Below are positions 8,761-51,648 of a stretch of DNA of 64,000 nucleotides, one piece after another (the first letter of the stretch is position 1; each line of letters starts with the position of its first letter). Location of the stretch: assembly GCA_053919585.1 (NCBI GenBank), contig CM132796.1; one strand, 5' to 3'. A program made the position numbers and the translations under genes. The DNA is from Euprymna scolopes. Lineage: Eukaryota. Under the pieces are notes generated by a model. That model was not told where the DNA came from, did no database searches, and worked only from the letters and a program-made list of their open reading frames with translations.

Positions 8761-11700
8761 TATTGTTTGTCATATTTTTAAGCAATAAAAGCTAAATTTT
8801 TCTGTTAATGTCGCAAATATGGCGCAATAATGATGTTATGTATTAGTATGTAATAAATAAATTTGCAAAAGAAGCCAACCATAATTGAACAGGATGCTAC
8901 CTTTTTAAAAGCATTTTTCATAGTTTACAAATGTTTCGCTTGTGTAGAGAAATGAAACACTTTAATTTACTTAAGTATGTATTATTAAAGTTATTTGAGG
9001 TAAAAAAAAATATATCAGTGAGATTTCAGATTAAACCTTTTCTATAAATTTCAATCTGCTCTAGTCTTCATTTTATGTCGGATGAATCGAAATCCGTTTG
9101 TGTATTTAAAGATTTTTTTTCTTTTCTGCAACCTCTTTCCCACAAAAGAGAAGTTTAAAGCCGGTGTCTTCCTTATCGTTATTTTCATGGCAAGTGCTCG
9201 TCTGAGCTCCAATCTATGCCCCCCATTCGCCAAACTCTCACGAAAAACACGCGTCTAGCTGAAACAACTATCAATAATTCCCCCCACTCTTTATCTGTGC
9301 ATAAACCTAAACGTAGATTCCATGAACAAAGCTTCTTTCTTAGAGCTGCATGCATGTGAAACTGCTTTTCAGCTGACTACAATTTGGTCGTCTTCAAGTT
9401 TTCCTGCTTTCCAACTGACTTCAATATGGTCGTCTTCAAGTCCAACGACAACAAATTCTTGATGAACCGTCCCCTTAAGTAATCCAATTTACCAAATTTC
9501 CATACTAACGATTACTATGATATTATCCCATTGACTACTGTCCACCCGTTAACCTTTATCCTCGAGTGGCCACCGGGCCTTGATAAGTGGTGACTCCTAT
9601 GTAAAAAGATAAAAACTCACTCGATTGTATGTACAATTGCAGTGTAGTCTACGCTACGTGCGTATATTGATAACTTTTAAAACAGTTACTTTAACAGATA
9701 TGGACACATTTTATTAAATGCACATCATATAGTGTAGGAATACATATTTACAAACTCATATATTTTTTCGTCTTTATTTCATTTTATTTGCTATTCAACT
9801 TCACTATAAATTCTTCTAACATTTCCAGGGGAGATCAGTTTGAATATCATTGATCCCATTACGAAGATAGTAAAGCAAACGTTGGCTAAGGTGACCGGGA
9901 ACCAAGGTGCAGAATGGAAGAGAATTGTGGGAACAATTGGTGCCAAGCCGGCAGGATTTGCTGTAAGTTGATTAAGATCTGTCTTTGTAATAATGACATT
10001 TTTATGCAAACAAATGGCTTCCATGTGTTTTGTATTTATTTGCTCAATGAGCGTGACATAAGGAAGAAGAATCAATTTATTAATTTTTATTCATTGCGCA
10101 CTATTATCCTCATCTTTTTCTTAGTTGGTTCACGACGTTTCGGCCAACTATTCCTTCTTTCCTTCGTCAGATGGTAACCGCAACGGATAGGAACTCTGAA
10201 TCTCCTGACTGCATTCACTGCAATTACTGTCTTCCATAGTTGTTGTCGTCTTACCACGTTTTCAGGAGATTTTCAGGAGTCAGGAGATTCAGAGTTCCTA
10301 TTCGTCGCGGTTACCACGTGACGAAGGCCAGAGGAATAGAAACGTCGTGAAACAACTAATAACATATGAGGATAATAGTCTGCAATAAATAAAATAAATA
10401 ATACTCATCTAAATGAATTTCAATTAAAAATAATATATACCATTCGGTATGGATCTGCCCATGGAAGAGCAAATAATAAACATGAATTTATGAGACCAAA
10501 AAAAAAAAAAATTCAACCTTGATCTTTCTTCCTGGTCGGTGGCGCAGTTGATAGAGATGTTGAATCTCTACGGTCCTAGGTGATAATTGTCTGAAGATAG
10601 CGGTTTCAATCCTATCCAAAGCCGGACAGAGGCTTACTTGGCCAAAACGCGATAAGACGACAACAACTATGGAACGCACTAATTGCAGTGATTGCAGTCA
10701 GAAGATTCAGAGTTCCTATCAGTCGCGGTTACCACCTGACGTAGACAAGAGGAATCGTTGGCCGAAACGTCGTGAAACAACTAATAAAAAGATGAGGATA
10801 ATGGTCCGCAATAAATAAAAATTAATGAATAATACTCATCTCAATGAATTCCAATTGAAAATGAAGATGAATAAGTTAAAATTCTATGGTATGAAAATTA
10901 TTATGAAGATGAATCTTATCATTGACAAGACGTTTTAATTATGTTGCTGTTACGCCAACCATGGAACGTGGCGTAGTTGATAGCAAGCACCATTGTATTT
11001 TTATCTAACGCAAAAGATTCACTAAGGTCGAATTTCAGTTTTGCTTTTCTGGGTGTTTTTTTGTGAAGTTTTTGTTTAAGGATCATGACAGGAATTCTTA
11101 ATGTTATTACATGCCGCATGTAAATAGTATGTTATGCCAATCTGTTGTCAATCGTTCCCATAATATTGTGTCAATCAATGCGCATAGATTTTCTGATTAG
11201 CACTTTAATTTTTAATTTTGTGACGAATATAACATATCCGGTATCGCAATGTATCAGTATCCGNNNNNNNNNNNNNNNNNNNNNNNNNNNNNNNNNNNNN
11301 NNNNNNNNNNNNNNNNNNNNNNNNNNNNNNNNNNNNNNNNNNNNNNNNNNNNNNNNNNNNNNNNNNNNNNNNNNNNNNNNNNNNNNNNNNNNNNNNNNNN
11401 NNNNNNNNNNNNNNNNNNNNNNNNNNNNNNNNNNNNNNNNNNNNNNNNNNNNNNNNNNNNNNNNNNNNNNNNNNNNNNNNNNNNNNNNNNNNNNNNNNNN
11501 NNNNNNNNNNNNNNNNNNNNNNNNNNNNNNNNNNNNNNNNNNNNNNNNNNNNNNNNNNNNNNNNNNNNNNNNNNNNNNNNNNNNNNNNNNNNNNNNNNNN
11601 NNNNNNNNNNNNNNNNNNNNNNNNNNNNNNNNNNNNNNNNNNNNNNNNNNNNNNNNNNNNNNNNNNNNNNNNNNNNNNNNNNNNNNNNNNNNNNNNNNNN

Positions 11701-24184: not shown

Positions 24185-27100
24185 ACAAATTAGAAGCTTT
24201 CAACTTTTTCTTTTGTTATTTTAGAATGTCGGGATGACTTTTGCGCTAACAGTGAAACGTGCCAGATGAAAAACGGCATCCCAGAATGCCTGTGAGTAAT
24301 GTTTCTTTTTCTTTCCTTTATAAGTCATATTTAATCAAAAGAAATAATATGGATTTATTTGATATTAAAGTAACATTACAATACTTATAAATAATGAACC
24401 AGTTACTTACTGTAATATCCCTCTCGAGATTTTTACTCGGTTAAATGTAGTGCCAATTTTCATGTAATGCGTATCCCGAATTTTCATGTAATGCGTATAC
24501 ACAATTTCTGACAATAAAAAAATATCAAAATATTGTGTGGGCCAATCGATTCTCGCCGTTCAATCCATTTCGCGCGAATTCTTTATCCAAATATCCACAA
24601 ACCTCATTCATAAAACGTGATATGGTTACAATGCTGTTCAAATTACACATTTTGTAGGATGGGTTATGGAATGTCATCGAGTCGAGATAAAAATAGAATT
24701 ATAAATGATGCTGGTATGATTAAAATGTAAGAATATAAAAAAATTCTAAACTAGTCGCTAAACGAAAATGTACATTTGCACTATTTTGTTTATTTTTCAA
24801 ATGTTTTGTTTTCTGAGATTTCGTACAAACAACCGAATAAACTTTGCAGTTTCACCTGAAAGTTCTTCAATACAAAATTAATCGTAAAGTTTTATGAATT
24901 CATTATTTATTTATAACAATATCTGTTTTGTATTTTTATAGCAAAGTGAATTGTTGTAACAGCGTATGTCTATCTAAATACAAATTATTTTCTCACATTA
25001 TAATATTTATAGGCTTAAAAACAAATGATAAATTTGCCATAAAGAAAACAAGACTACGGCTTTATTTTAAAACGTTTACTGAAAAAATCAATTCGGGTAA
25101 CTTGATTATGACATCTATAAAATGTAGTCGTTTTCAACATCGATCATTGCCTCGATACGGGTCCGTGGCGATAACTCTTGGGATGGCGGCAATCACGCTG
25201 GCTTTGATGTTGTGGGAGGTCATGTTTATGATGTTCTCGACGTGTGACCAAACGGAATAGTTTAACGGATGCAGGTAGTGGTTGGAGGGAGGGCAATGAA
25301 AGAAGGGTATAAAGTCGTACCACTGTTTCTTAAGCCAAGCCTTTGTTTCTTGTGACTTGTGGACCGGTGCCGAATCCTGCTGCCACACCCAGCGTCTGCC
25401 AACGGTTACCTGATTGCACCAGGAAATCACCACATTCTTCAGCACATCCAGATACACTTCGATGTTTACTTTCAATCGGAGATGTGAGGTGGCATGATGT
25501 GGCACTCACTTAAAACCAGTAAAGATCATAACCGTAGCTGGACACTTCGTTGAGCTGTGCCCAAAAACGTTGATCCGTCCGGAACTGCATTTTTAGGGTG
25601 CTGGCAATGGACCTATTGTCATAAGTTGGATCGGCAGAGAACATGAGCTGGGCAGGGGCTCATCTCGGATCTCGCTCGTTGAACATTGTGTCACTTTAAG
25701 ACATGATAGAAGGCTCCTATCGCTATTGGGCTTTGTACACAAGTGCCAAACTAGTGGAGAGTCTGCAACAATGCCATCTTTTTCAGGGCGACAATTTTAT
25801 CTTTCCACCCTGTAGTTGCATATTCACTCCTAAAATATACGACATAATCACGTTTGGAACCCAGGTTCTCGTCAGATTACAGAAGTTAAGTAACAATGAG
25901 CCTGGCCAGTGCAAAATGGGTGACCGTTTAGGGCTTTCGGGTGCTATATGTGCTCTTAGCTTATCTCATTTTCTTCTTGCCACTGGACTCAGTATCGATT
26001 CAGGAGAAGTGTGATCAGAGATTGCGCAACCCTAGCCAAAAAATTCCTAAAATAATTAACCGATCATTATAAATTTTGGAAACAACTGCTACGCGTAAAG
26101 TGTGCAACGTATTCTATATTTATTTTACTTAGTCTTACGTAAACACAGTCAAGAGATGTTAACTCTCTTTGTTAAAATGTGTATATCTCTGATTATTTTA
26201 AACTTTAACTATGAGTACTAGATATCAACTGATACGATTGTTCAAATTTTAGACTTTTGTGAGTGAGTAAATAGTGGTATTGGAGAGACAAAATGTGAGG
26301 GCAGAATCGCATTTAAATATTTCAGATTTACATTGGACATTACCTTAAAATTAAAATTCCCTTAATTTTAATTTATTCTTAAATCTCCTAATACTTAAGC
26401 GGGAACGTTTAGATATTTTTAGAATCAAAGTCATGAAATGGGTATTTCTCGACATTTGAATTAGGGTTTTAGACATAAGGTTAAATATCATTATATCTTG
26501 ATTTTTTAACTTTTGCCATGGACCATAAATTTGTTACAAAGTTGATATGTCCATCGAATTAATCTTACTCGTTCTCTGACGAGTATTCCATTTTTATATG
26601 TGTAAATATCAATTTGTCTATCGCACATATTATCGTCCCCTGTTTTATAATGTTTTCTACTCGTTTCAGATGCAAGGAGGAGAACGTGAATTTCCGATGC
26701 GTCCGTATTATAAGCGAACAACAGTCATCGGGAGGAAGCAAAAGTGAGTAACGTATTTGCAAAACGTGTTTCGAGCCAATGAGTACACTTCAGTGCAAGA
26801 TCACGTTTAACATCTTCACCGTTTCTTAATAATATAAGAAAACGCGTAGGTAATACTGTAATAGACGTTAGGAGCCGTGCGGGCTTGAACAGAGAAAATA
26901 ATTTCCAACTCTAACAAAAGATTAGTAAAAAACAAACAATTAAATTATCATCCATGTGTAAAACAGACAACAAATAAATATATGTAGAATAATCAGAACA
27001 CATTATTTGACATTAAATTTATATAATAACTAGCAGGACCTGTTAACCGACTTTGCCCGGTGGAAGCCTGTATCTCCTCGTAAAAATAGTAAACTACAGT

Positions 27101-30100: not shown

Positions 30101-33100
30101 AAAAAAATCCAAGACGTAGTTATTGAGAAAAGTGAGGACAGACGAGCGGACGAACGGATGAAAGGACGAGGGTGAATTTACAGTTCCACCTTCCTTTTGT
30201 CGGGGGACCACAAAAAAAGAAAAGAAAGAATGATGGTTTATATGTAACATTTAGATTGTTCAGACTTTTGTTATGAGAATTGATAATATGTGTTATTTGA
30301 AACGATGGATATTTTCAATCCTTATCCCCAAAAGTCGGAAACATTCTATCAAATCGATCGGGACTCGACTTAATACAAAAATGAAAACAATTCGATGCAC
30401 TTTCCGTTTCATAAACAACTACATTCTTTTTCATCGTTCACCAATAATAGCTATTGTTACAATACAAATGAAGAAGGTCAGAGTTTAAATTACCTGAGCG
30501 GCTGTAAGACTAACAATCGAAATGAGAACACTTGCGCAAGCAATCCGAATAATAAACTCATATATGCACTTTTGATTGGTTTTGGCGTGGTTCTTATTGC
30601 TACACAATTACCGTTTCTGGGTGTTTAATTGTCTACAACGTAGCGTCAACATCGCTTGATCAGTCGTCACCAAACTTGGTCAAAAATATCAGTTATTTAA
30701 TTTACCTTCTTTCCAAGATCAAGAGCGGGTTTTCATAAAATCTTTTTTGTGGAACGGACAGGATTCGAACTTGGCACACGCAGGGTTTTTTTTTTTTTGT
30801 CCGTGTTTTAGTACTTGTTATTAATCGCTTAACAAGTTAAAATATTATACACGATCTAACTTTGAACCGATTTTACTTTCGGATATATAAATCAATAGTG
30901 CAAATCAAGGTCATGGAAAAGCTGAAAATCACATACTGGGTGATAACTTTAATTCGATTCATCACAAACGCTCTGAATTACTTAACTTTAATCCGATTCA
31001 TCATAAACGCTCTGACTTACTTAACTTTAATTCGATTCATCATAAACGCTCTGACTTAACTTTAATTCGATTCATCATAAACGTTCTGACTTACATAACT
31101 TTGGTTAGATCCATCATAAACACTCTGACTTACATAATTTTGGTTCGATCCGTCATAAATGCTCAGACTTACATAACTTTGATTCGATCCATTATAAACG
31201 CTCTGACTTATATAACTTTGAATCGATCCATCATAAAAGCTCTGACTTAGATAACTTTGATTCGATCCATTATAAACACTCTGACTTTCATAACTTTGAA
31301 TCGATCCATCATAAAAGCTGTGACTTACATATCTTTGATTCGATCCATTATAAACGCTTTGACTTCATATATGCATGTAGTTCAGAATTATACATTGCTA
31401 ACACGTGTAAATTTAAGTGGCTTTTTAGCATGTATAGAGTTGTCGTTGAAGACTGAAAATGTATTTATTCCAAACTATCGAATAGCGAATAGCGAACGTT
31501 CAGGTGAGATAAATTTGACCTCTAAGCAACCTTATGAAGAAAATACTCGGACAATAATAGACAGCAAAAATGGAACCCAACATGCGATCAGTTTCGAATA
31601 ATGTTGTAACAGGACGTGTATAAGTGCGTGGAAAATATCAGCAACAGCTGTAGGATAGCTGGCTTGTGAAGATATTAGAAGGAGAAAAAAAGGGGGGGAA
31701 AATACTCCACGTGGTTGGGCGGGAGAAACAAGGTCCGCGCCAAAGGAGATAAATGTGTAAAGTTAAAAGCGGCGTGATGTCTGAAGAGAGAAAGAAAAAC
31801 GCGAACCGGCTGAGATATATGTGTGCCCCCGCTGTGATGACGAGCAACTTTTAAGCTGGTGTCGAGACGGCAGGGTGTTGTTAATCTCATATCAGATGAA
31901 ATAATCTGTTAGAGAAAATAAGAAGCATGTATTGTTTGGAAATGAGTGTCTTTTGCTAAAGCAGAAAAAAAAGCCGAGTCGAATTTATTTATTTTTGTTT
32001 GTTCTTTATCGACGATCCCGGACGGCATGGAGGTAGGAGACAGGTTTGAACCGTAACGATCATAGTCGAATTTACCGGCCACGTTATAATATTAGACAAA
32101 AATATGTGTGGGAATGGTTTGTGCATATAATCGCCACAAGCATATAAAAGAAGAGAGAGAGAGAGAGGATGTGAGAGCGGGGTGAGAGGGGAAAAGTTGA
32201 GAGTGATACGTCACTGGTGCACGAAACTATCCAAACTGGTTCTAATAATTTCCATACTACTCTATCACAACGCAATGTTTCTGTGTGTTTTATATGATGT
32301 TTGTGTGGCCCATATAAAAAGAAAGGTTAGAAAATCTACTTAAGATCTAAGAATGTTTTCTATAAAATTAACCAGGAAGACAATGGAAGTGCTTCTGAAT
32401 TCATACGTGCATTTCTATGTGAGCTGTAAGGAATTATCACCTTGACACTTCTAAGATATCCTATTTTATGAAAATTAAATCCTACGTACAATCTCTAAGT
32501 TTCATCTCAACCTAAGGGAACTATGGAGATTGAACCTAATTTAAAACTTAAAAATACCATATTTTCATAAAATTTATATCATATGAATATCATTCTCTAG
32601 AAAAGATATTGCAAGTGGTTCCGAATCTTTATCGTATAAGAAATTATTTATTTAATGTTATTTAATTTTTCTTTTTTGTTAGTCAAAAGTCTATTAAAAT
32701 AACTGTACACAAGAAATACAACTTTCGTTAATAATAATAAAGAGCGGTATCTATTTATTTTTTTGACATAGGCATCACCACCTATCAAGGCCCAGAGACC
32801 ACTCGTGGATAAAGGTTAAGAGTGCACAGTAGTCAACTGAACAATATAGTAATTGTTAGTAATAGAAATTCGGTAAATGTGTTAACTTATATGGGACGGC
32901 TCATCAAGAACTTGTTTACGATGGACTTGGAGACAATCATATTGTAGTCAGCTTGAAAGCAGAAGAACGGAAGACAATTCCACAGGCATGCAGTTCTAAG
33001 AAAGAAGCTTTTCCATGGAATCTACATTTAGGTTTAGGCACAGATATAGAGTGGAGAGAATTATTGATAATGTTTTCAGCTAGACGAGTGTTTCTTGTAA

Positions 33101-35574
33101 CGTTTGGCGTGGAGGATCATAGATTGAAGCTCAGTCGAACACTTGCCATGTAAATAACGATAAAGCAGAGACAAAATCTTCTGTGAGATAGAGGTTGCTG
33201 AGAAAAGTAAAGGACATCTCCTACAAGGATACGAAGTCTATTTTGAACTCTATCAAGGCAGGACAAGCCCTTTCTAGCAGCTCCTGTCCAGATGTGGCAA
33301 AAGTACTCCATCCTTGGACGAACTTGGCTCTTATATAGATAGGGAATTGCATCAGCAGTGAGATATCTACTGGATCGATAGAAGGATCCCACCATTTTTC
33401 CAGCGGCCTTGGCAACATATTTGATGTACGTGTTCCATTTCAGATCAGGAGAAAAGGTCAAGCCCGGAAGTCAAAACGCCTCCTGAAGACGAGAGCCATT
33501 CATTTCAATTGATGCCAGATGTGGATCAGAACGTTGATGATGTAAAGATAGAAGCTTGGTTTTAGATGCATTAAAAGTAACCAGCCACTTCTTTCCCTAT
33601 TGTACCACGTGCTCAAGATCAGAGGAGAGAGAATCATAGAGACCTTGGCCGATTACGGTCTTAGAGGTGCTACCATAGATAGAAGTGTTATCAGCATAAA
33701 TGTCTGCGAATGATATAAGGATGTGATTTGGAAGATCATTAATGTAAATCAGAAAGAGAGTTGGGCCCAGGATGGAACCTTAGGGACTCCAGCATTAATA
33801 CTGTGAGCTCCTGACTTCTGCCCAGTAACTACTACTCTTATGAACCTATCAGAGAGAAATGATTTAATAATTGAGAAAACATTTCCAGCTATACCATAGC
33901 TAGACATCTTGTGAAGTAAACCTTTATGCCATACCCTATCAAAGACGTTTGATATGTCAAGAGCAATTGCCCTAGAAAGGTTGCCTCTGTCGAGCGATTC
34001 GCTAATCCTATGAGATATAACTGTAATTTCTATTTCTATAAATACGTATAATAAGTACTGTTTTCTTATTTTATTATAATTGGATCGAAATATGCGCTTA
34101 TTTAACTTCTGCGGCATGAGTAACTTATGCGGAATCCGCGTTAACACTAATATTGAGTTGAGTTAATCTAAATCTAAATAACTGAAATTTTCAGACTTAT
34201 GACCATTTTAAATATCAGAAAAATAATTTGTGATGTTTTAATGGACGATTTCAGAAATGTATACGCAAATAATTATTGGCATATTGCAGCTAAATATGCA
34301 CTTGTTTATAACAGAAATCGATTGTTTTTATAGGAAACCCTTTATCAGCGATTGTACAGAATAGTTAATAGGGGAACACGAGGTTAAAATAAAACAGATC
34401 TCATTCATAAGTTTCACTGCTGTTATACTGTCTCCGTTTTTTTTTTCAAATTCCATCTCCTCCGAAACGGTAAGGTCGCACAACGATGCAAAACGGCTAA
34501 AATGATTACATTTTTGTTTTTGTCTACCGTTCTTTTATGGTTCTTTAGCCTGTTAAAATAGTTTTAATGAGTCAACATTGGAAGAAATCGTAACTTGCCA
34601 AGCGTGAATCAACTGAAACTACTCTTACACGCATGCGCAAATCGTTATACATTTTATACATTTATACGTTTGTTTATGTTTAATAATTTCATATCCGATT
34701 GATGATGGTCCAGTGGTAACGTGATTAACTTTTAATCCTAGTGTGTTGCTATCGGTTTTGGTTTCAATTGTAGCTCATGGCACTCAAGTGATACTTGTTA
34801 AAACTTTTGTAATCACAAGTGGGTACAATATCATATCAGACAATCAATAGAAAATTGTCTGATATGAGATTATATACGAAATCTAACTAAATTAAGATAT
34901 ATTTAAGCGTATTTTATGACCTGGAAACGCTTAGAACCTCGCTAGTATTCAATAAATTATTATTATCAAATGCAATACACGTTTCTTTCCTACCTAACTG
35001 GATATTTTTATGTTTTAAAGTCTTTTAATTTTTTTTTTTATTATTTAAATTAAGTTTCTGTTAAAGTAAAATCTGGTTACTTCCAAATGTCAAAGTAGCT
35101 GAATCAAGTTTCTGGAAATCATCAAAGTTTTGATTAATGGGCTTTTCGTCTTTGGGGTTAAAAAACAAACAAACAAAAAACGTAATATAATTTATTCTTC
35201 TGCTCATTGAAAAAAGAAAAAAATGGTTGGTGATTTCCGGAAACTTTGAATCAGCCATGTTGACATGCTGCTGTAACCAGATTGTACCTATTTACTATGC
35301 CTCCCCACGGGACAAAGTTAGACACCAGGGTCGTTTTTTAACGTGGAGAAAAGGTACAAAAATAAAAATTGTCTCAGTCGTGAAGGATTTCTCCTCCACT
35401 GAAAGAGAACAAGAAATAGAAGTGCAGCATCTGAAGAACAGATACTACACTTTGATCTTGAACAAAAGGCCAAGGATTAAGTTGAACAAATAATTTCATT
35501 AAAATAAAAAAGCTTTCAGAGATATAAAAACATAAAAATTCGGAGATAAGTAGAAAAATAACTTAAGTGATAGT

Positions 35575-44495: not shown

Positions 44496-46303
44496 GGTAC
44501 TGGTCGCGATTAGAGTTCCCTGCCGAACACCCTAAAAAAACACTGACTTATCCCCACGCATGAGCGAAGGACATGTTTTAGTTGCCATAGTAACTAAACG
44601 ATCATGAATTTTTATCGACTTTGTTTTACTGTTTATGAATATTGTACCTATTTACTATGCCTCCCCACGGGACAGAGTTAGACACCAGGATTACTTTTAT
44701 CGACTTTTTTTTTCTTTTTTAAATAGCATTTTCTTTTTTAAATGACTACGTTTTACTGTTTATGTCTCACTTTTATCGACTTTTCTTTTCTTTTTTAATA
44801 GCATTTTCTTAAAATGAATATTAAAATAATTTCCCAACTTTTTTCATTTCTATGTGTTTTTAGTTTTGTGTGTTGAATAAAACTTATTTTTCATTACAAC
44901 AATAGTTATCGACCCCGGTTCTTTGGCTGACAAACGACATCTGTCGGCGGTTCTTGAAACTAAATTACATGCATTCGCTTCATGTTACTGACATGCAGAA
45001 GTGCCAATGGTGCCATAGGTGTTATTGTAAATTAACACTCTTAGCTAATTCCGTAAAATGAGATTCTACTTTTTTAGGCGAATTTGCACCCTCCCCATGT
45101 TAAGAATGGCTTTTTAAATAATAACGTTATTTCAACACGGATCAATAAGTGCACTAGTACCACAAAATGGTGATAGAATAATAAATTTACTTACCACAAA
45201 ATGGTGATAGAATAATAAATTTACTTACGTTTAATCAATGTTATTTTCGCGCCATTCATTCACTTTTATCGACTTTTTTCTTTTTTTTTTAAAATAGCAT
45301 TTTCTTTTTTAAATGACTACGTTTTACTGTTTATGTCTCACTTTTATCGACTTTTTCTTTTTTAATAGCATTTTCTTAAAAGGAATATTAAAATAATTTC
45401 CCACTTGTACAAACATTTTTACATTCGCATATAAACAACTATTTTTTTAAATTTTTAACTTTTTTCATTTAATGAATAAAATAAATCATTTATCATTACA
45501 ATGTGTTTTTAGTTTTGCGTGTTGAATGACACTTTTTTTTTTCATTACAACAATGATGAAACAAATATTCCGGCTTGCGGTAAGGAAGGGTTACGCATGC
45601 CTGGAAGGAATTGGTTCCTGTTCATTTACTTCGATTACAACACAAGACAACTTTATTTTCCAAAATGTTTACAGAGCTAACCTAATGGACCAAGGATTTT
45701 GAATCCGCATATCAGTTCCTTAAGGAAAGGAAGATAGCTGCTTCAAAAATGAACTGCATTGTATGTCAGCGAGAGATGACAGTCATTAACTACCGGGGAA
45801 CGAGAAGATTCCGTTGCAAAACGCACAAAACCCAAACAGCAAGCCTAACCAACGGGTCATATCTGAAACGGTCAAAATTGACTTTCTGAGATTTTATCAG
45901 AGTGGTATACTCATGGGCATAACTATTGTGGTAATGAAAAAAAAAAGTTTCATTCAACACACAAAACTAAAAACACATAGAAATGAAAAAAGTTGGGAAA
46001 TTATTTTAATATTCATTTTAAGAAAATGCTATTAAAAAAGAAAAGAAAAGTCGATAAAAGTGAGACATAAACAGTAAAACAGTAAAAATAAAAGTCGATA
46101 AAAGTGATTAAAAGAGAGATATTATTAATAAATGTGTAGTAATGTCTTTTATTTCAATATTCATAAACATTAAAACAAAGTCGATAAAAATTCATGATCG
46201 TTTAGTTACTATGGCAACTAAAACATGTCCTTTGCTCATGCGTGGGGATAAGTCAGTGTTTTTTTAGGGTGTTCGGCAGGGAACTCTAATCGCGACCAGT
46301 ACC
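44496..46303 (+). mobile_element. Non-autonomous Merlin (IS1016/ISXO2-like) DNA transposon
   Basis: ~135-bp near-perfect TIRs starting GGTAC; exact 9-bp TSD CATTTTATA (44487-44495, 46304-46312); internal remnant at 45665-45832 AYQFLKERKIAASKMNCIVCQREM...FRCKTHK (N-terminal Zn ribbon). Confidence 0.85.
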
Positions 46304-46332
46304 CATTTTATATTATTAATGTTATCAACTTT

Positions 46333-46406
46333 TCTTTTTTTTTCTTTTTTTTTGTACATAGGCGTCGTCACTTATCAAGGCCGATAGACCACTCAAGGAT
46401 AAGGGT
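46333..46406 (-). mobile_element. 53-bp LINE 3' tail + poly(A) forming the 3' end of the chimeric insertion
   Basis: acataggcgtcgtcacttatcaaggccgatagaccactcaaggataagggt matches the tail at 32766-32817; T tract at 46330-46353. Confidence 0.85.
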
Positions 46407-46594
46407 TGTATAATGTCGGGGGTTCCCGTCTCGCGGGTATCAAACAATACGAAAGAATAACAACGCAGGCATTAACATGTTAACAACAGCTCGGTCGCAG
46501 TCAGACTGACGGCCAAAACATAATTTATTGAAGAGCGCACATAACTAAGGGTAGATAAATCATAGAGTTATGTCCCTTGATTGGGGACATCACA
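46407..46594 (-). mobile_element. Gypsy 3' LTR (188 bp) preceded by a polypurine tract (46606-46595)
   Basis: Minus strand GATGGGGAGGGA|TGTGATGTC...AATAAA...GACATTATACA. Confidence 0.8.
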
Positions 46595-46762
46595 TCCCTC
46601 CCCATCTTGGTGGGACAACTTGTCTTATTTTAATTTTTTTTTTGTTTACTAATTTTTTATTTTTATTATTTCTTTTTATTTATTTATTTATCTTACATTA
46701 TGAAGTCTTTGAATCTGGCTGGGGGCAGTCTTTTCCAAGATGGATTTCGTCTCGGTAACTGG

Positions 46763-48163
46763 TCAGCTATTTGTGTTTCGGGTATTTCCAGGTCTTTTGG
46801 GGGTGTGTGGATTGTACTCACTTTCCCAGTCGGAATCAGAGTCAGGGTTTTCGTTCCTAGGTGTTATGCGTTTTAGCAAAGAAGAGTTTCTAGTCATTTT
46901 GTGATTTCCTCTCTGCACCGTTATCATACTTCCCTTCATTTTTGTAATGGTATATGTTTTAGAATTGTATGGTGTTGACAGTTTGTTTTGTCTCTTCTGT
47001 CTGATCAAAACCATATCACCCAGGCTGAGAGTTGTTGTTTTTGCCTTTCTATCAGCGTACCCCTTCATCTTCTCTTTTCCTTTGGAGTCATTTTCTTTTA
47101 TTCTTTTATGTATCGGCCCTGTTACTGGGCTTTCGATACCATTTGGTATGCCGATGTTCATTTTTTGGCCCGTACAAGCTTCAACTGGTGATATTTTAGT
47201 GGTGGTATGGGGGGGGGCTCTATATTGCCTTAGGAAATGTGGTAACTGGGTCTTCCAGTTGTGGCCTTCCACCGTGGCTGCAAGAATGTATTTTTTTAAG
47301 GTGCGCATAAAATGCTCTACTTCACCATTTGCCTCCGGCCATAGAGGTGTAATGCGTCTATGTTTGAAACCTGCTTGTGCCGCTAAGTCTTTAAAGTCTT
47401 GTCCTTGAAATGGTGGATAGTTATCAGATTTTAGAATGGTTGGATATCCTTGTCTAGCAAAGATCATATTCAAACGGGGAATAACTGTACACGCAGCTAT
47501 TGAGTGTATTACCTCCACCTCAGGGAATCGGCTGTAATCGTCGATTATGACTAACACATAGTCACCTGATGGGAACGGACCTGCAAAATCGACTGAGATT
47601 TCAGTCCATGGTGCAACTGGTAGTAGTGAGGAGTGTATGGGTTCGCGGCTCATGTGCCTTGGGTCTGAGGCTTGGCAGGGAATGCATCCGTGTATTGTTT
47701 CCTCCACCAGTCTATCGATTCCTGGGAACCATACTTTTTCCCTTATCAGTTGTTTGGTTTTGACCATGCCCTGGTGAGATTGATGGGCTAAATCGACGGA
47801 TCTCTTTCTCAATTTTGAGGGGATTACAAGCGGATGTCCTCGAAGGACGAGACCATTGTGTGTTGAAATTTCATCCTTGAATAGGGAAAAACTTGACAGC
47901 TGGGGTTCATTCCATCGTCCATCTTTAACAGCACCCTTGACCTTTTGTAACTGGGGGTCCTGTACTGTGGCTTGTTTGACTTCCTCAAGAGTTAAAGATT
48001 TTGGTATTATATTCTTAGCTATATACCTTATGTAGGCTTCTGCTACATTGTTTTTAGATGGTATGTGTTGTGGGTAACGACTCAGATAGTCCACAGGGTT
48101 TTGGCCATCTTTCCCGGGACGGTATACCAGGTTGTACTGGTAGGGCATGAGGCGAAGACGCCA
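46763..48163 (-). mobile_element. Ty3/Gypsy pol fragment: end of RNase H + complete integrase, open frame
   Basis: WRLRLMPYQYNLVYRPGK...DYLSR; HHCC zinc finger (AHQSHQG...CIPCQ); catalytic VDFAGP / SDN / NGEVE. Confidence 0.95.
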
Positions 48164-48164
48164 G

Positions 48165-49515
48165 GGTTAAATCTTTGTTGTTATCGGTTTGAGACTTTTC
48201 ACAATTACAATTTCTTCTGGATGTTCACTGCGAGCATATAAGAGCGAGAATCCAAGTTCTTGGTCTTCTCAATTACCTGCTGATAAGGAGAGATGGCCTT
48301 GGTTCCCATGACAACATGGCCAAGTTTGGAGTCAATCTTTGCATCCAGATGGGCATTACGGATCAAGTTGACAATCCAGTGTTCAGCTTCATCGGGAGTC
48401 ATGTTCAGCTTTTCGGCCAGCATGTTGATACTGATGCACTCGTGGATACGGCAGAAGGTCTAAAAATGAGCAGTCGTGCATTCTCAATGAAATCATCTAA
48501 ACAGACAGTCAAGAAGAAATCATTAATAAGCACAGTTTCACATTATCGGAGTTTCTGCTGCGCTCCATCAAAATCAAACTTTACATATAGACATTCCACA
48601 AATTCTGTGATTGAGTCTCTGAAAGTGTAGGATTCTTGTTGGATGACTTTGACCAAGTCTTTCAGTACCTGTCGTCGCTGGTTTTTATTGGTAATAACAG
48701 CTGTTGTTAAATATCTCAAAATATGAGGGCAGACCGTCTGGATAGCATTCAGCTAGTTGTCCTGGTAAAGAAACAAGTCGATGATGAGATCGCGGCCTTT
48801 CGGATGATTGAAATAAACAAATAATGACCAGTGGACGAACCAGGCCCTTTGCTGGAGCGATTGCAAAGCAGAGTTGAAAGCCGCATTGCTATCAATGAAC
48901 TCGCGAAGCCGGTTCAAGTCATCAAGTGCCGCATCCCAGTTTTGCATTAGGATTTCCGAGGCCAGTTTCCCCCAGAGTGTACTCATGTACAACTTGTCGT
49001 TAGAAGGCAAAAGAGTGCGCACAAAATACAGATACTGTGCCGTGCCCGAATAATTACCGCACTCATATTGAAACTTAGCGTAATTGTATAATGTCTGTAC
49101 CATGTTATCGCTAACTTGGTGCTCAGTATGTAGGTATTCCATGAGCTGGACTCCATCTCTGGCATTTTCGATTTGCTTTAAAATATCATCTTCCTCCATC
49201 AGATTCGTTATCTTCTCGGTCTGTTCTTGGAGTTTCTTCAGTTGACCAACGACGTCTATTCTTTTCTGGCGGAGAGTGTTAGGGACATCTTGGTTAGGGT
49301 ATAGGCTCCTATGTACATCCATAGCAAAGTCCACCATGTTTGTGTTGCTGAGCAAGTCTAATTTTCCTCGTAACATTTCTTTTTCATCGTAAACTTCTTT
49401 GATAAGAATTCTAATAGTGGAAAGACCAGATGCTGGTCTAAATATTGGCCCATTCGGGTCGTCAAGTCAAAGTTCGCCATATTGGTTACGAGTAATGGCG
49501 GCGAAAAGGGAAGAA
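48165..49515 (-). pseudogene. EIF3E: Processed (intronless) pseudogene of translation initiation factor 3 subunit E (Int6), including the 5' UTR
   Basis: ATG at 49480 [27 protein letters not shown] through [24 protein letters not shown] and [14 protein letters not shown] to NIQKKL; no introns; frameshifts near 49401 and 48461, stops at 48755-48753 and 48545-48543. Confidence 0.97.
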
Positions 49516-49557
49516 CCGCGCAGGATCAAAAATTCGTCGCAGCTTTTTTTTTTTTTC

Positions 49558-49601
<44 letters not shown>

Positions 49602-50760
49602 CAGCGCCAATAATACAAAATGCAATCTTTACGTGACTATTAAGAGGATCGTTTTTGTTTTCAGGTCACAGTTCTTTTTTCGACTATATTACAAAAAAAT
49701 GAAAATGCAACGATAATTGTAGAGTGATTATTTTTTTTTTTATGTCGCACTCTTAGTAAAATGGAGTTGTCTCTCTCTTCCCAGTAACCTTGTGTAAAAC
49801 AGCGGCGTTTTATTAATGTTATCAACTTTGCTAGATTAAAATAAAAATTCGTCGCGTTTTTTTTTAATGGCTTGATTTAATAAATAAAAAAAAAATATCG
49901 CTATTAGTAGGGTCCTAAATTATGAGATGAAAAAAATGAAAGTATCTCTTAGTAAAATTGAGTTGTCTCCCTCTGCACATTAACCTCGTGTAAAACAACG
50001 CCGCTTGACCTTTCTTTTTTTATCTTTCAAAGACAATACAAAATTAGACGTAAGTATGACAAAATAATTATGATCAACCGCTTTTAAAAAACTATAGTTC
50101 TGTTTATTGTGTACGTTTATTCTCATAGAATAGCCGAATACAAAAAAATAAATAAATAAAAATAATAATAAAAATGAAAACCTTTTTAAATCGTAAATTC
50201 GAAAGAGGTTATCTCCCTTACATCATAGTCATTAAATAATATAACCTTAAAAAAGAATGCTAGTGTATTTACTTAGACAAAATGGTATGGTATAGCTGAT
50301 GTATAAACTACAGAATATTGCATACTTGTGTGGTTTCAGAAAAAAGAAGGCAAAGGTAAAGAAATATTTTCTTTGGGGGTGGGGGCGTTAAACTGTGTCA
50401 TACACACAGGCTGGTCCCCTTATGCTAAATAACCGTCTACTTACTTTTAATAAAAAAGAAAATGTTAATACAAACTGGTGCAACTTCAGTTTATGTTGAT
50501 AAGGTGTGATTTCTATTGAGATGTTAAAAAAATATTTTGAACGCATTTAGACAACAACCTAATGTTCATGATATGACACAAAAAAAAAACAAGTATAGAA
50601 TTTAAATAATTAATTTATTGTTTTTAATTAAAAAAAATGCTTATTTTGATTAATGAATTGACCAAAATAGTATATATTATAAACAATAAAAGAATGCTTT
50701 AATATTTTCTTTTCAAAAAATATTTTTCTTTTATAAATATAAAACAAACATTATCGCCAT

Positions 50761-51635
50761 TCCTTTTTTATGCAAAGGAGTCACCACTTATCAAGGCCCA
50801 AAGATTACTCGAGGAATTGGGTTGATAAATGTAAGGTGTTAGTTTAGTAATTGTAAATAATGTAGATAGGGTAGGATTTGGATTATTTCAGGAGACGGCT
50901 TAAAAAGAATTTGTTTACATTGGACTTGAAGGCTACAATATTTTAATCGGCTAAGAAGCAAGCCAATGGACAGAGTTTCACATTATTTTTCTTTTGCAAA
51001 GGAGTCAAAACTTATCAAGGCATAGGGACCACTCGAGGATAAGGGTTAATAAGTGTACAATGGAACAATGTTGTAGTAATTGTTAGTTGTGGAAATTTGG
51101 TAAAACATAAACGATCTGTTATCTTGCTTATGTTTTCTGTTCTGACTATGGGTTGATGTTTATACAATTCGTGAAGAGTTGTATTTATTTACATAGGAAT
51201 CAGCAGTTATCAAGGCTCAGAGATCACTCGAGGATAAGGTTTAAGAGTGTACAGTAGTCAATTGGACAATGTAGTAATTGTTAGTAATGGAAGTTCAGTA
51301 AATTTGTTAACTTAAGTGGAACGGCCCATCAAGAACTTGTTTACGTTGGACTTGAAGATAATCAGATTGTAGTCTGCTATAAAGCATGAAACCGGAAGAA
51401 AGTTCCACAGGCGTGCACTTCTAAGACATGTAATCTATGTTTAGGTTTAGGTTTAGGCACAGATAAAGAGTGGGGGTAATTATTAATTGTGTTTTCAGCT
51501 GGACGAGTGTTTTTTGTGAAATTTTGGCGATGGGGGACCATAAATTAAAGTTCATGAAAATGACGATAAAGCAGAGACAAATTCGCAACATCTCTTCTGG
51601 GAGATAGAGGTTGCAGGGAAGAGAAAAGGACAACT
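50761..51635 (-). mobile_element. Three consecutive truncated 3' ends of the CR1-group LINE
   Basis: Tail motif (ttatcaaggc...actcgagga) at ~50788, ~51012 and ~51207. Confidence 0.85.
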
Positions 51636-51648
51636 TACCCAGGCATAA

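What the first reader, a model, noticed from the sequence alone, without database searches (positions are those of the whole stretch)
46333..49519. Tripartite retro-chimera: host eIF3e mRNA + Gypsy integrase/3' LTR + LINE tail and poly(A), inserted as one unit
Seen, all on the minus strand with no spacer: intronless eIF3e from 5' UTR to its last codons (49515-48165); an abrupt join to Gypsy pol at the RNase H WRLRL motif (~48164); integrase, PPT and a complete LTR (to 46407); 53 bp of the local LINE 3' tail; poly(A). There is no 5' LTR, PBS, gag or RT, and no eIF3e poly(A). An empty-site version of the target is at 49811-49855 (TATTAATGTTATCAACTTT|GCTAGATT...AAAAATTCGTCGC), and its two halves flank the insert. 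Inference: LINE target-primed reverse transcription started on a Gypsy read-through RNA ending in a LINE tail, then switched template to eIF3e mRNA and ran to its 5' end. Alternatively, eIF3e was first captured in a Gypsy particle and the product was later mobilised by the LINE. Either route uses both retroelement classes. It would let a tail-recognising LINE retrocopy host genes through a borrowed tail. It does not fit the standard poly(A)-primed or two-LTR retrocopy structures.
Basis: partly seen in the sequence, partly recalled or inferred. Interest (0 to 1): 0.9.

Follow-up and report, generated by a model that had tools for sequence, protein, structure and literature searches.

The report
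Three-part eIF3e–Gypsy–LINE retrocopy
A dead, spliced copy of the host gene eIF3e is fused head-to-tail to the last 1.8 kb of a Gypsy-type element and then to the last 53 bases plus A-tail of a LINE, all inserted at one point in the genome. It is a rare but known kind of by-product of reverse transcriptases changing template, unusual here because it joins both classes of retroelement.

Summary
The structure is real in the assembly, with corrected borders, all on the minus strand. After one extra G (49527) comes spliced eIF3e cDNA (49526-48208), which lacks the last 15 codons, the 3' UTR and the poly(A). A TA dinucleotide (48207-48206) follows. Next is the Gypsy RNase H end, integrase, PPT and a complete 186-bp LTR (48205-46409). 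One extra C (46408) follows, then the last 53 nt of an abundant APE+RT LINE (46407-46355) and an A-rich tail (46354-46330). It sits in an ~18-nt patch of similarity (p about 1e-4), not at CTGG. Both flanks belong to a single copy of a dispersed repeat; about 13 nt of target are missing and there is no TSD. I conclude this was one LINE-primed insertion of a composite cDNA with at least one homology-guided template switch (about 0.8). How the exact LTR end came to abut the LINE tail is unresolved. No source locus exists in this assembly. Read-through of a Gypsy nested in a LINE tail (about 0.45) competes with capture of a one-LTR Gypsy–eIF3e cDNA. The junctions could not be confirmed with reads. 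This is a new variant of the known LINE or LTR template-switch chimeras, a single-copy pseudogene of moderate interest.

The parts
49811..49855 (-). Uninterrupted paralogue of the target sequence (same dispersed repeat family). It serves as a pseudo 'empty site'.
   Evidence: One search found the exact gapped pattern once in the window, with 0 expected. One search found 23 such copies genome-wide. Alignment.
49528..49540 (-). Left half of the interrupted target repeat (GCGACGAATTTTT), directly 5' of the insert.
49527..49527 (-). Extra G between the target and the first eIF3e base. It is absent from the target family (A/T there) and from the parent gene (A there), so it looks like a cap-derived nucleotide.
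   Evidence: parent upstream sequence; target family. That it comes from the cap is inference.
48669..49526 (-). eIF3e retrocopy, exon-1-derived part: 46-nt 5' UTR, ATG at 49480-49478, and a 4-nt deletion near 49400.
   Evidence: Pfam eIF3_N. mRNA contigs end at 49492/49498, inside the copy's 5' end.
48208..48668 (-). eIF3e retrocopy, exon-2-derived part, joined to exon 1 without the 16-kb intron. It stops after ..KKL, 15 codons before the parent's stop codon.
   Evidence: The parent mRNA contigs diverge from the window at 48208.
48206..48207 (-). TA dinucleotide at the join. Both the parent and all 8 Gypsy copies checked have GG at this position.
46763..48205 (-). Gypsy pol 3' part: end of RNase H (..WRLRL..) and integrase. 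A 461-aa frame is open from 48148, and one in-frame stop lies just after the join.
   Evidence: (Integrase_H2C2, rve).
46595..46762 (-). Gypsy 3' non-coding stretch, with the polypurine tract at 46608-46595.
   Evidence: the position directly before the LTR start is read from the sequence.
46409..46594 (-). Complete 186-bp Gypsy 3' LTR (TGTGATG...ACATTATA), ending at the family's exact terminus.
   Evidence: A 5-bp TSD (GTCTG) in copy L011 fixes the LTR ends.
46408..46408 (-). One extra C between the LTR end and the LINE tail. The LINE consensus has T here.
46355..46407 (-). Last 53 nt of the 3' UTR of an abundant, 5'-truncating, poly(A)-ended APE+RT LINE.
   Evidence: This block is better conserved than the UTR just upstream in two diverged subfamilies.
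46330..46354 (-). A-rich tail (C A9 G A9 G A4). Its last 3 A may belong to the target (AAAG).
46314..46329 (-). Right half of the interrupted target repeat (GTTGATAACATTAATA). Homology to the family continues for about 45 nt.

Best explanation
This is one retro-insertion of a composite cDNA, started by the LINE machinery.

Shown. The insert sits at a single point of one dispersed-repeat copy. About 13 nt of target are lost and there is no duplication. It ends with a true LINE 3' end plus A-tail that abuts an AAAG in the target. Its 5' end is the start of spliced eIF3e mRNA, preceded by one untemplated G.

Inferred course. The LINE endonuclease nicked the target at the T-run opposite AAAG. Reverse transcription began on the A-tail and copied the last 53 nt of LINE 3' UTR. 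It continued through a complete Gypsy 3' LTR, the PPT and integrase to the end of RNase H. There the nascent cDNA re-annealed at an ~18-nt patch that eIF3e mRNA happens to share (TTGGG..GAAAAGTC), roughly 170 nt before the likely poly(A) site. It then ran to the cap.

Most likely the LTR/LINE join was already in the template RNA. A Gypsy copy had integrated, by its own integrase and hence at the exact LTR end, into the 3' UTR of a LINE copy. A read-through or LINE-driven transcript therefore ended in the LINE's own tail, which the LINE reverse transcriptase accepts. Under this route only one template switch is needed. The product is a dead single-copy pseudogene.

I put the general claim (a single LINE-primed composite insertion with at least one template switch) at about 0.8. 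The specific read-through route is about 0.45.
For: Single site. The flanks are the two halves of one repeat unit that are 7-23 nt apart in 23 uninterrupted copies.

LINE priming. The 53-nt tail matches at 96% and is followed by an A-tail. The LINE has an APE+RT ORF2, thousands of 5'-truncated copies 96-97% alike, and poly(A) ends.

No TSD is not unusual here. I saw no obvious TSD by eye at the 5 distinct 5'-truncated LINE copies inspected.

RNA origin. The 16-kb GT-AG intron is absent. The 5' end extends 28-34 nt beyond assembled mRNA contigs and carries an extra G.

Template switch. The similarity at the join scores 12, against 17 of 200,000 random position pairs reaching that score.

Pre-existing join. 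The LTR ends at exactly the terminus seen at 7 other integrated copies, which is the signature of integrase-made junctions. LINE-processed copies of LTR-element RNA otherwise end at R, without U5 (PMC5016936).

Tail recognition. The retained 53 nt is the better conserved block of the LINE 3' UTR: 83% and 75% identity, against 63% and 59% just upstream.
Against: No source locus was found. The LTR/LINE join is unique in the 5.9-Gb assembly. The reciprocal 5' join is absent, and no other copy of this LTR lies within about 70 nt of such a LINE end.

Homology-guided switching to an internal site is better documented for LTR-element reverse transcriptases (PMC5131818) than for LINEs.

The TA at the join matches neither template. 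The C at 46408 needs a T>C variant in the presumed source LINE.

There is no TSD.

None of the contigs listed in the truncated outputs bridged the chimeric junctions, so the assembly is the only witness. Junction-region words were found only in two low-depth runs.
Confidence: 0.45

Rival explanations
1. Gypsy-particle recombinant captured at a LINE site. Inside a Gypsy particle, minus-strand synthesis switched from Gypsy RNA to co-packaged eIF3e mRNA at the similarity patch and ran to the cap. This gave a dead-end cDNA with a single, complete LTR and no PBS or 5' LTR. That cDNA was then joined by its LTR end, in one of two ways: to a 53-nt nascent LINE cDNA at an abortive TPRT site, or by one-ended integration into a short LINE copy already present here. 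Its other end was joined to the target by end-joining, with loss of about 13 nt.
For: The mRNA 3' truncation plus microsimilarity at the join is exactly the 3' junction type of LTR-mediated retrocopies; 86% of such junctions show microsimilarity and some carry short filler (PMC5131818). The similarity at the join is significant. The complete LTR with an exact end follows directly from cDNA synthesis primed at the PBS, so no unobserved source locus is needed. The 1-nt and 2-nt odd bases at the joins fit end-joining or jumps. Target loss without a TSD fits repair.
Against: It needs two retroelement intermediates to meet, or a one-ended integration, both poorly documented in animals. Unprocessed cDNA should end ..ATTATATC, since TC lies between the LTR and the PBS, but the window has ..ATTATAC. 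No second example exists in the genome.
Confidence: 0.25
2. Double template switch during one TPRT on three separate RNAs. The order would be LINE RNA (53 nt copied), then Gypsy RNA, then eIF3e mRNA, as proposed for the known tripartite LINE chimeras.
For: There is precedent for double switches in a fungus, mouse and human (PMC2104539). An extra nucleotide at the LINE/Gypsy join is typical of jumps. The LINE part is short and ends where the conserved tail block ends.
Against: The acceptor would have to end exactly at the LTR terminus, but Gypsy genomic RNA should end at R. The AATAAA lies about 115 nt before the LTR end (read). A read-through RNA has no reason to end at the LTR terminus. Only 4 matches genome-wide to an exact 30-nt pattern requiring non-T at the three preceding bases, so this position is not evidently a preferred break point, though diverged copies would be missed.
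Confidence: 0.1
3. Separate events at this locus later fused. A 5'-truncated LINE inserted first, a whole Gypsy then integrated 53 nt before its A-tail, and an eIF3e cDNA arrived nearby. A deletion between the similarity patches, or break repair, then removed the eIF3e 3' end, the LINE 5' part and the Gypsy 5' 2.9 kb.
For: The exact LTR end next to LINE DNA is what an ordinary nested integration gives. The similarity patch could equally guide microhomology-mediated deletion. Nested TEs are common around the site.
Against: It needs three or four independent hits within a few bases of one another in the same orientation. It also needs a deletion that leaves eIF3e's exact 5' end next to the very repeat half that pairs with the right flank. 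No remnant of eIF3e poly(A), LINE 5' part, 5' LTR or Gypsy TSD is left.
Confidence: 0.1
4. Assembly artefact: a false join of reads from the eIF3e gene or mRNA, a Gypsy copy and a LINE copy.
For: No contig listed in the truncated outputs bridged the joins. The one deep DNA-like run (X1) shows only parent-type letters next to the join. X1 is not among the holders of junction-region words.
Against: False joins arise at long repeats, not at a 9-18-nt patch or at a 1-nt filler. The borders fall at biologically exact points: probable cap site, splice junction, LTR terminus, LINE end, and the two halves of one target. The eIF3e part has its own mutations, so it is not the parent. X1 has a contig crossing the exon-exon join (48546-48709), and its exon-1 contig lacks the 4 nt that the mRNA has. 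This suggests an intronless DNA copy there too. Logan contigs drop variants, so absence is not evidence. There are no N runs nearby.
Confidence: 0.04

Closest known systems
LINE-made chimeric retrocopies by template switching (U6/L1-type bipartite chimeras; tripartite WEIRD–Mg-SINE–MGL in Magnaporthe, B2–U6–L1 in mouse; PMC2104539)
   Same: The parts are fused directly in the same orientation. The 3' part is a 5'-truncated LINE end with an A-tail. The 5' part is a full-length cellular RNA copy. There are three parts in one insertion.
   Different: The middle part is an LTR-retrotransposon fragment that ends at the exact DNA terminus of its LTR, not at an RNA 3' end. The switch to the mRNA is internal and homology-guided. 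There is no TSD but a ~13-nt target loss. The host is an invertebrate (mollusc by run labels), and the LINE is not L1 or MGL.
LTR-mediated retroposition (mRNA captured inside LTR retrotransposons by microsimilarity-dependent switches; PMC5131818) and retroviral oncogene capture
   Same: The mRNA is 3'-truncated and joined at a patch of microsimilarity to the internal pol region. The element's 3' part and a complete 3' LTR follow. Short odd bases lie at the join.
   Different: There was no switch back to the element, so there is no 5' LTR or PBS. There is no 5-bp integration TSD. The 3' LTR is followed by a LINE tail and A-tail, and the mRNA is copied to its cap.
LINE-processed pseudogenes of LTR elements (HERV-W processed pseudogenes made by L1; PMC5016936, PMC5537654)
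   Same: Sequence of an LTR element was moved by LINE-type insertion and ends in an A-tail.
   Different: Those copies end at R of the 3' LTR (U3-R, no U5) with the element's own poly(A) and have TSDs. Here the LTR is complete, and the A-tail belongs to a LINE 3' end.
SINEs and composite elements that borrow a LINE 3' tail (tail-recognising 'stringent' LINE/SINE pairs; SVA-type composites)
   Same: A non-LINE sequence carries the LINE's terminal block, which may be what the LINE RT recognises. The retained 53 nt is the better conserved part of the UTR.
   Different: This is a single copy that has not amplified. Tail dependence of this LINE is only hinted at by two diverged subfamilies. The fold of the tail is not unusual (z = -1.2).

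Membership tests
LINE template-switch chimeric retrocopy (Buzdin/Gogvadze type) | The 3' part is the 3' end of a LINE (or other LINE-mobilised RNA) with a poly(A) tail | tested here: met
   53 nt at 96% to the LINE end plus an A-rich tail. The LINE has an APE+RT ORF2.
LINE template-switch chimeric retrocopy (Buzdin/Gogvadze type) | The parts are copies of different transcripts, fused directly in the same orientation | tested here: met
   eIF3e, Gypsy and LINE are all on the minus strand, with only 2-nt and 1-nt odd bases between them.
LINE template-switch chimeric retrocopy (Buzdin/Gogvadze type) | The whole chimera is flanked by 10-20-bp target-site duplications | tested here: not met
   No repeat at the borders; about 13 nt of target are missing relative to 23 family copies. 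I saw no obvious TSD by eye at the other copies of this LINE inspected.
LINE template-switch chimeric retrocopy (Buzdin/Gogvadze type) | The junction falls at the 3' end of the acceptor RNA | tested here: inconclusive
   The Gypsy part ends at the LTR's DNA terminus, not at an expected RNA end. The eIF3e acceptor site is internal.
LTR-mediated retrocopy (Tan et al. 2016) | Microsimilarity at the mRNA/LTR-element fusion point, with the mRNA only partly copied | tested here: met
   ~18-nt imperfect patch, p about 8.5e-5; the mRNA lacks its last ~170 nt.
LTR-mediated retrocopy (Tan et al. 2016) | The retrocopy is flanked on both sides by the LTR element, with 5' and 3' LTRs and an integration TSD | tested here: not met
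   There is no Gypsy sequence 5' of eIF3e; the target repeat follows directly.
Classical processed pseudogene | Intronless copy of a spliced mRNA | tested here: met
   The 16-kb GT-AG intron of the parent is absent.
Classical processed pseudogene | Own 3' UTR and poly(A) tail, plus a TSD | tested here: not met
   The copy ends 15 codons before the stop and has no eIF3e 3' UTR or poly(A). There is no TSD.
Ty3/Gypsy LTR retrotransposon (the middle part's source family) | LTRs with a short TSD, PBS and PPT; pol order PR-RT-RNase H-IN | tested here: met
   In full copy L011: 186-bp LTRs, 5-bp TSD, PBS TGGCGACGAG; PR and RVT_1, then RT_RNaseH, then Integrase_H2C2 and rve. No phylogenetic placement was done.
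APE-type non-LTR retrotransposon (the tail's source family) | ORF2 with an apurinic-like endonuclease and RT; 5'-truncated copies; defined 3' end | tested here: met
   1016-aa ORF with Exo_endo_phos and RVT_1. Copies are truncated at many points and end in poly(A). The clade was not determined.

The most novel reading that the evidence does not exclude
The join between an exact LTR terminus and a 53-nt LINE end records direct contact between the two retrotransposition pathways. A dead-end, one-LTR Gypsy–eIF3e cDNA made in a virus-like particle was picked up, either by a LINE reverse transcriptase jumping onto its end or by repair of a LINE-made break. If so, LINE target-primed sites can serve as entry points for LTR-element cDNAs that cannot integrate on their own.
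Probability: 0.25. Interest if true: 0.65.

Novelty: new variant of a known kind. Interest (0 to 1): 0.42.

Why it matters
Chimeric retrocopies show what reverse transcriptases do to cellular RNA in vivo. Those described so far come either from LINE machinery (mammals, a fungus) or from LTR-element particles (flies, vertebrates, plants, yeast). This one, in a large invertebrate genome, carries hallmarks of both. It has a homology-guided mRNA/pol junction and a complete LTR, as in LTR-mediated retroposition. It also has a LINE tail, an A-tail and a single-site insertion, as in TPRT. If the route could be fixed, it would show one of two things. Either a LINE that reads its own tail can move foreign sequence through a nested element, or LINE-made breaks take up LTR-element cDNA. 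As it stands it is a single, decayed, apparently unexpressed copy with no evident effect on the host.

Tried and rejected
(1) Source locus for the read-through route. The 148-nt and 33-nt junction queries, the predicted reciprocal 5' junction, and a gapped pattern for any LTR end within about 70 nt of a LINE end all found only the window.

(2) A near-identical Gypsy donor. The best other copies are 97% identical.

(3) A hot spot for LINE truncation or switching at the 53-nt point. Only 4 matches genome-wide to an exact 30-nt pattern that requires non-T at the three preceding bases. This suggests no hot spot, but diverged copies would be missed.

(4) A special RNA fold in the 53-nt tail. MFE -10.4 kcal/mol, z = -1.2, not distinctive.

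(5) Read support. Both read-laying runs used Logan contigs only. They show the parent mRNA and gene and many repeat fragments, but no listed contig across the chimeric joins. A word search with the 161-nt junction stretch found partial holders X8 (0.27) and X7 (0.20) but not X1. This is inconclusive, because contigs collapse near-identical copies.

Gypsy homology already starts at 48205.

(7) Priming of eIF3e mRNA directly on a nick in Gypsy DNA at the AAAAGTC run is rejected. The bases upstream of that run (ATTGTG) are Gypsy-type, not eIF3e-type.

(8) A-to-G editing as the source of differences from the parent shows no such bias. The changes are mixed, with G>A and C>T commonest.

(9) Earlier scan notes held nothing near the site.

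The 4 loci could therefore not be inspected.
Full report
**Setting.** The window is G000:C14:123876001-123940000 of a 5.9-Gb animal genome. Public runs that hold the sequence are labelled with one organism and with 'mollusc metagenome'. The feature lies on the minus strand, and there are no N runs between 46000 and 50000.

**eIF3e part.** Window 49526..48208 matches only one other place in the genome, on contig C10. There it forms two blocks: 865 nt at 98.5% and 479 nt at 96.7%. A Pfam eIF3_N search of the whole genome also finds only C10 and the window.
- In C10 the blocks are separated by about 16 kb with canonical GT..AG borders and encode an intact 441-aa protein.
- In the window they are joined precisely (48669|48668), so the copy was made from spliced RNA.
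- It has 20 substitutions, a 4-nt and a 1-nt deletion, and premature stops. It is a pseudogene.
- RNA contigs from two runs match the parent form, not the window's variants. I saw no sign that the copy is expressed.
- Homology to the parent begins at 49526. The base before it (G, 49527) is A in the parent and A/T in the target repeat family.
- Assembled mRNA contigs stop 28-34 nt inside this point.
- A full-length 5' end with one untemplated G is what reverse transcription up to a cap often leaves. That reading is inference.

**eIF3e/Gypsy join.** Parent homology ends at 48208 (..AAGAAATTG). The parent mRNA contigs run on from there with the parent's own 3' end (loose ends at 48208).
- Gypsy homology starts at 48205 (ATTGTGAAAAGTC..) in every copy compared.
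The eIF3e copy lacks 15 codons, the stop and the 3' UTR.
- Around the join the two templates resemble each other: parent TTGGGTTTGAAAAGTC, Gypsy TTGGGATTGTGAAAAGTC.
- A local-alignment score this high was reached by 17 of 200,000 random pairs of positions in the two sequences. The join is therefore homology-guided.
- The two bases between (TA) are GG in both templates. They are either junction errors or later changes.

**Gypsy part.** Window 48205..46409 is the last 1.8 kb of a ~4.7-kb element present in at least 40 copies; the nearest is 97% identical.
- A full copy (L011) has 186-bp LTRs, a 5-bp duplication, a PBS two bases after the LTR, and protease, RT, RNase H and then integrase domains.
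- The window's piece carries Integrase_H2C2 and rve.
- Seven other 3' LTR ends stop at ..ACATTATA and are followed by unrelated DNA. The window's LTR stops at the same base (46409).

**LINE part.** After one C (46408) come 53 nt that match the end of a LINE at 96%, followed by an A-rich tail.
- The LINE has a 1016-aa ORF with endonuclease and RT domains in one copy.
- It gives thousands of candidate matches. The copies compared are 5'-truncated at different points, 96-97% alike, and end in poly(A).
- In two older subfamilies the last 53 nt are better kept (83%, 75%) than the 41 nt before them (63%, 59%). This is a weak hint that the block is functional.

**Target.** The 13 nt before the insert and the 16 nt after the A-tail are the two halves of a motif that occurs uninterrupted 300 nt away (49811-49855) and at 22 other places in the genome. 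In those copies the halves are always 7-23 nt apart.
- An alignment shows that homology to this repeat family continues outward on both sides.
- The whole 3.2-kb block therefore sits at one point of one repeat copy. About 13 nt (..ATTTTAATCTAAC..) are missing and nothing is duplicated.
- I saw no obvious duplications by eye at the 5 distinct 5'-truncated copies of the same LINE inspected.

**Mechanism.** Three features make a single LINE-primed insertion of a composite cDNA the simplest account, at about 0.8:
- the A-tail against an AAAG of the target;
- the genuine LINE end;
- the single-site geometry.

At least one template switch, at the similarity patch, is needed.

The open point is why a complete LTR, ending at its exact DNA terminus, abuts an internal LINE position. 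LINE-processed copies of LTR-element RNA normally end at R and lack U5 (PMC5016936). An exact terminus is what integrase or the end of a finished cDNA gives. Four routes were weighed.

| Route | Content | Weight |
|---|---|---|
| A | A Gypsy had integrated into a LINE 3' UTR elsewhere. A transcript through it ended in the LINE tail and was reverse-transcribed by the LINE, with one switch to eIF3e mRNA. | 0.45 |
| B | The eIF3e/Gypsy recombinant arose in a Gypsy particle and was then captured at a LINE-made break or in a short LINE copy. | 0.25 |
| C | A double switch among three RNAs, as in PMC2104539. | 0.10 |
| D | Stepwise insertions plus a deletion. | 0.10 |

- Route A uses only ordinary steps, but its source locus is not in this assembly.
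- Route B matches the microsimilarity junctions of LTR-mediated retroposition (PMC5131818), which would give a one-LTR dead-end cDNA. It explains the homology and the exact LTR end without a source locus. It needs an unusual joining step, and the expected unprocessed end (..TATC) is not quite what is seen (..TAC).
- Route C does not explain the exact terminus.
- Route D needs several coincidences.

**Read evidence.** Only assembled contigs of public runs were available. They confirm the parent mRNA structure and the point where it departs from the window.
- None of the listed contigs crosses the chimeric joins.
- One DNA-like run (X1) has a contig across the exon-exon join, and its exon-1 contig lacks the 4 nt that the mRNA has. 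This suggests that an intronless DNA copy exists there too.
- Such contigs merge near-identical copies, so they cannot settle presence or absence.
- Words from the junction stretch were found in two runs of another study.
- Misassembly is unlikely (about 0.04) because every border falls at a biologically exact point, but it has not been excluded by reads.

**Comparison and novelty.** Bipartite and tripartite chimeras from LINE template switching, and mRNA/LTR-element chimeras from microsimilarity-dependent switching, are both described. I did not find a described case that combines an mRNA, an LTR-element fragment with a complete LTR, and a LINE tail in one insertion. The literature search was limited to the held library.

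By the strict criterion of flanking duplications it is not a textbook member of the LINE chimera class. By the criterion of two LTRs it is not an LTR-mediated retrocopy. I file it as a new variant of these known kinds. It is a one-off, decayed locus, interesting mainly as a natural record of cross-talk between the two retroelement classes.

Noticed in passing
G000:C10:136507808-136524977 (loci L017, L018): The only eIF3e gene of this genome has just two coding exons, split by one ~16-kb GT-AG intron. The ORF is intact at 441 aa. That is few introns for this gene and might mean the 'parent' is itself an old retrogene that replaced the original.
   Followed up: partly
window 49527-49900 and 46290-46332; e.g. 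G000:C1:130690154 and 130693227: The target is a dispersed repeat family (..GCTGCGACGAATTTTT..AAAGTTGATAACATTAATAATA..). Pieces also occur in inverted orientation next to each other, and one pair of copies lies inverted 3 kb apart. This may be the terminal repeats of a DNA transposon or a foldback element. Part of the family is strongly enriched on contig C46.
   Followed up: partly
window ~45950-46303: A different, very abundant repeat (more than 1600 candidate matches, 93-98% identical) begins about 30 nt beyond the insert's right border. It was not identified.
   Followed up: no
window 46763-48148 (-): The Gypsy integrase frame in the chimera is still open for 461 aa, while the equally long eIF3e part has two frameshifts and stops. 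At least one other family copy (L070) is also open. This is probably just a young family and chance (rough estimate p about 0.05).
   Followed up: partly
window 48208-49526 versus runs X1, X2, X4, X9: Several differences between the retrocopy and the assembled C10 parent (for example 49119, 48505, 48528, 48545) are shared with mRNA or gene contigs of other samples. The parent is therefore polymorphic, and the retrocopy is closer to another parental haplotype than 98.5% and 96.7% suggest.
   Followed up: partly
window 49559-49600: A (CA)n microsatellite has replaced part of the repeat unit just 5' of the insertion site.
   Followed up: no
window 9115-9603, 32766-34026, 51190-51644, 25182-25697: Four further fragments of related LINE subfamilies (76-88% identical to the young copy) lie in the window.
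   Followed up: no
LINE copies L012-L014, L037-L040: The last ~53 nt of the LINE 3' UTR are better conserved among diverged subfamilies than the UTR just upstream. This hints that the LINE recognises its own tail (only two diverged copies compared).
   Followed up: partly
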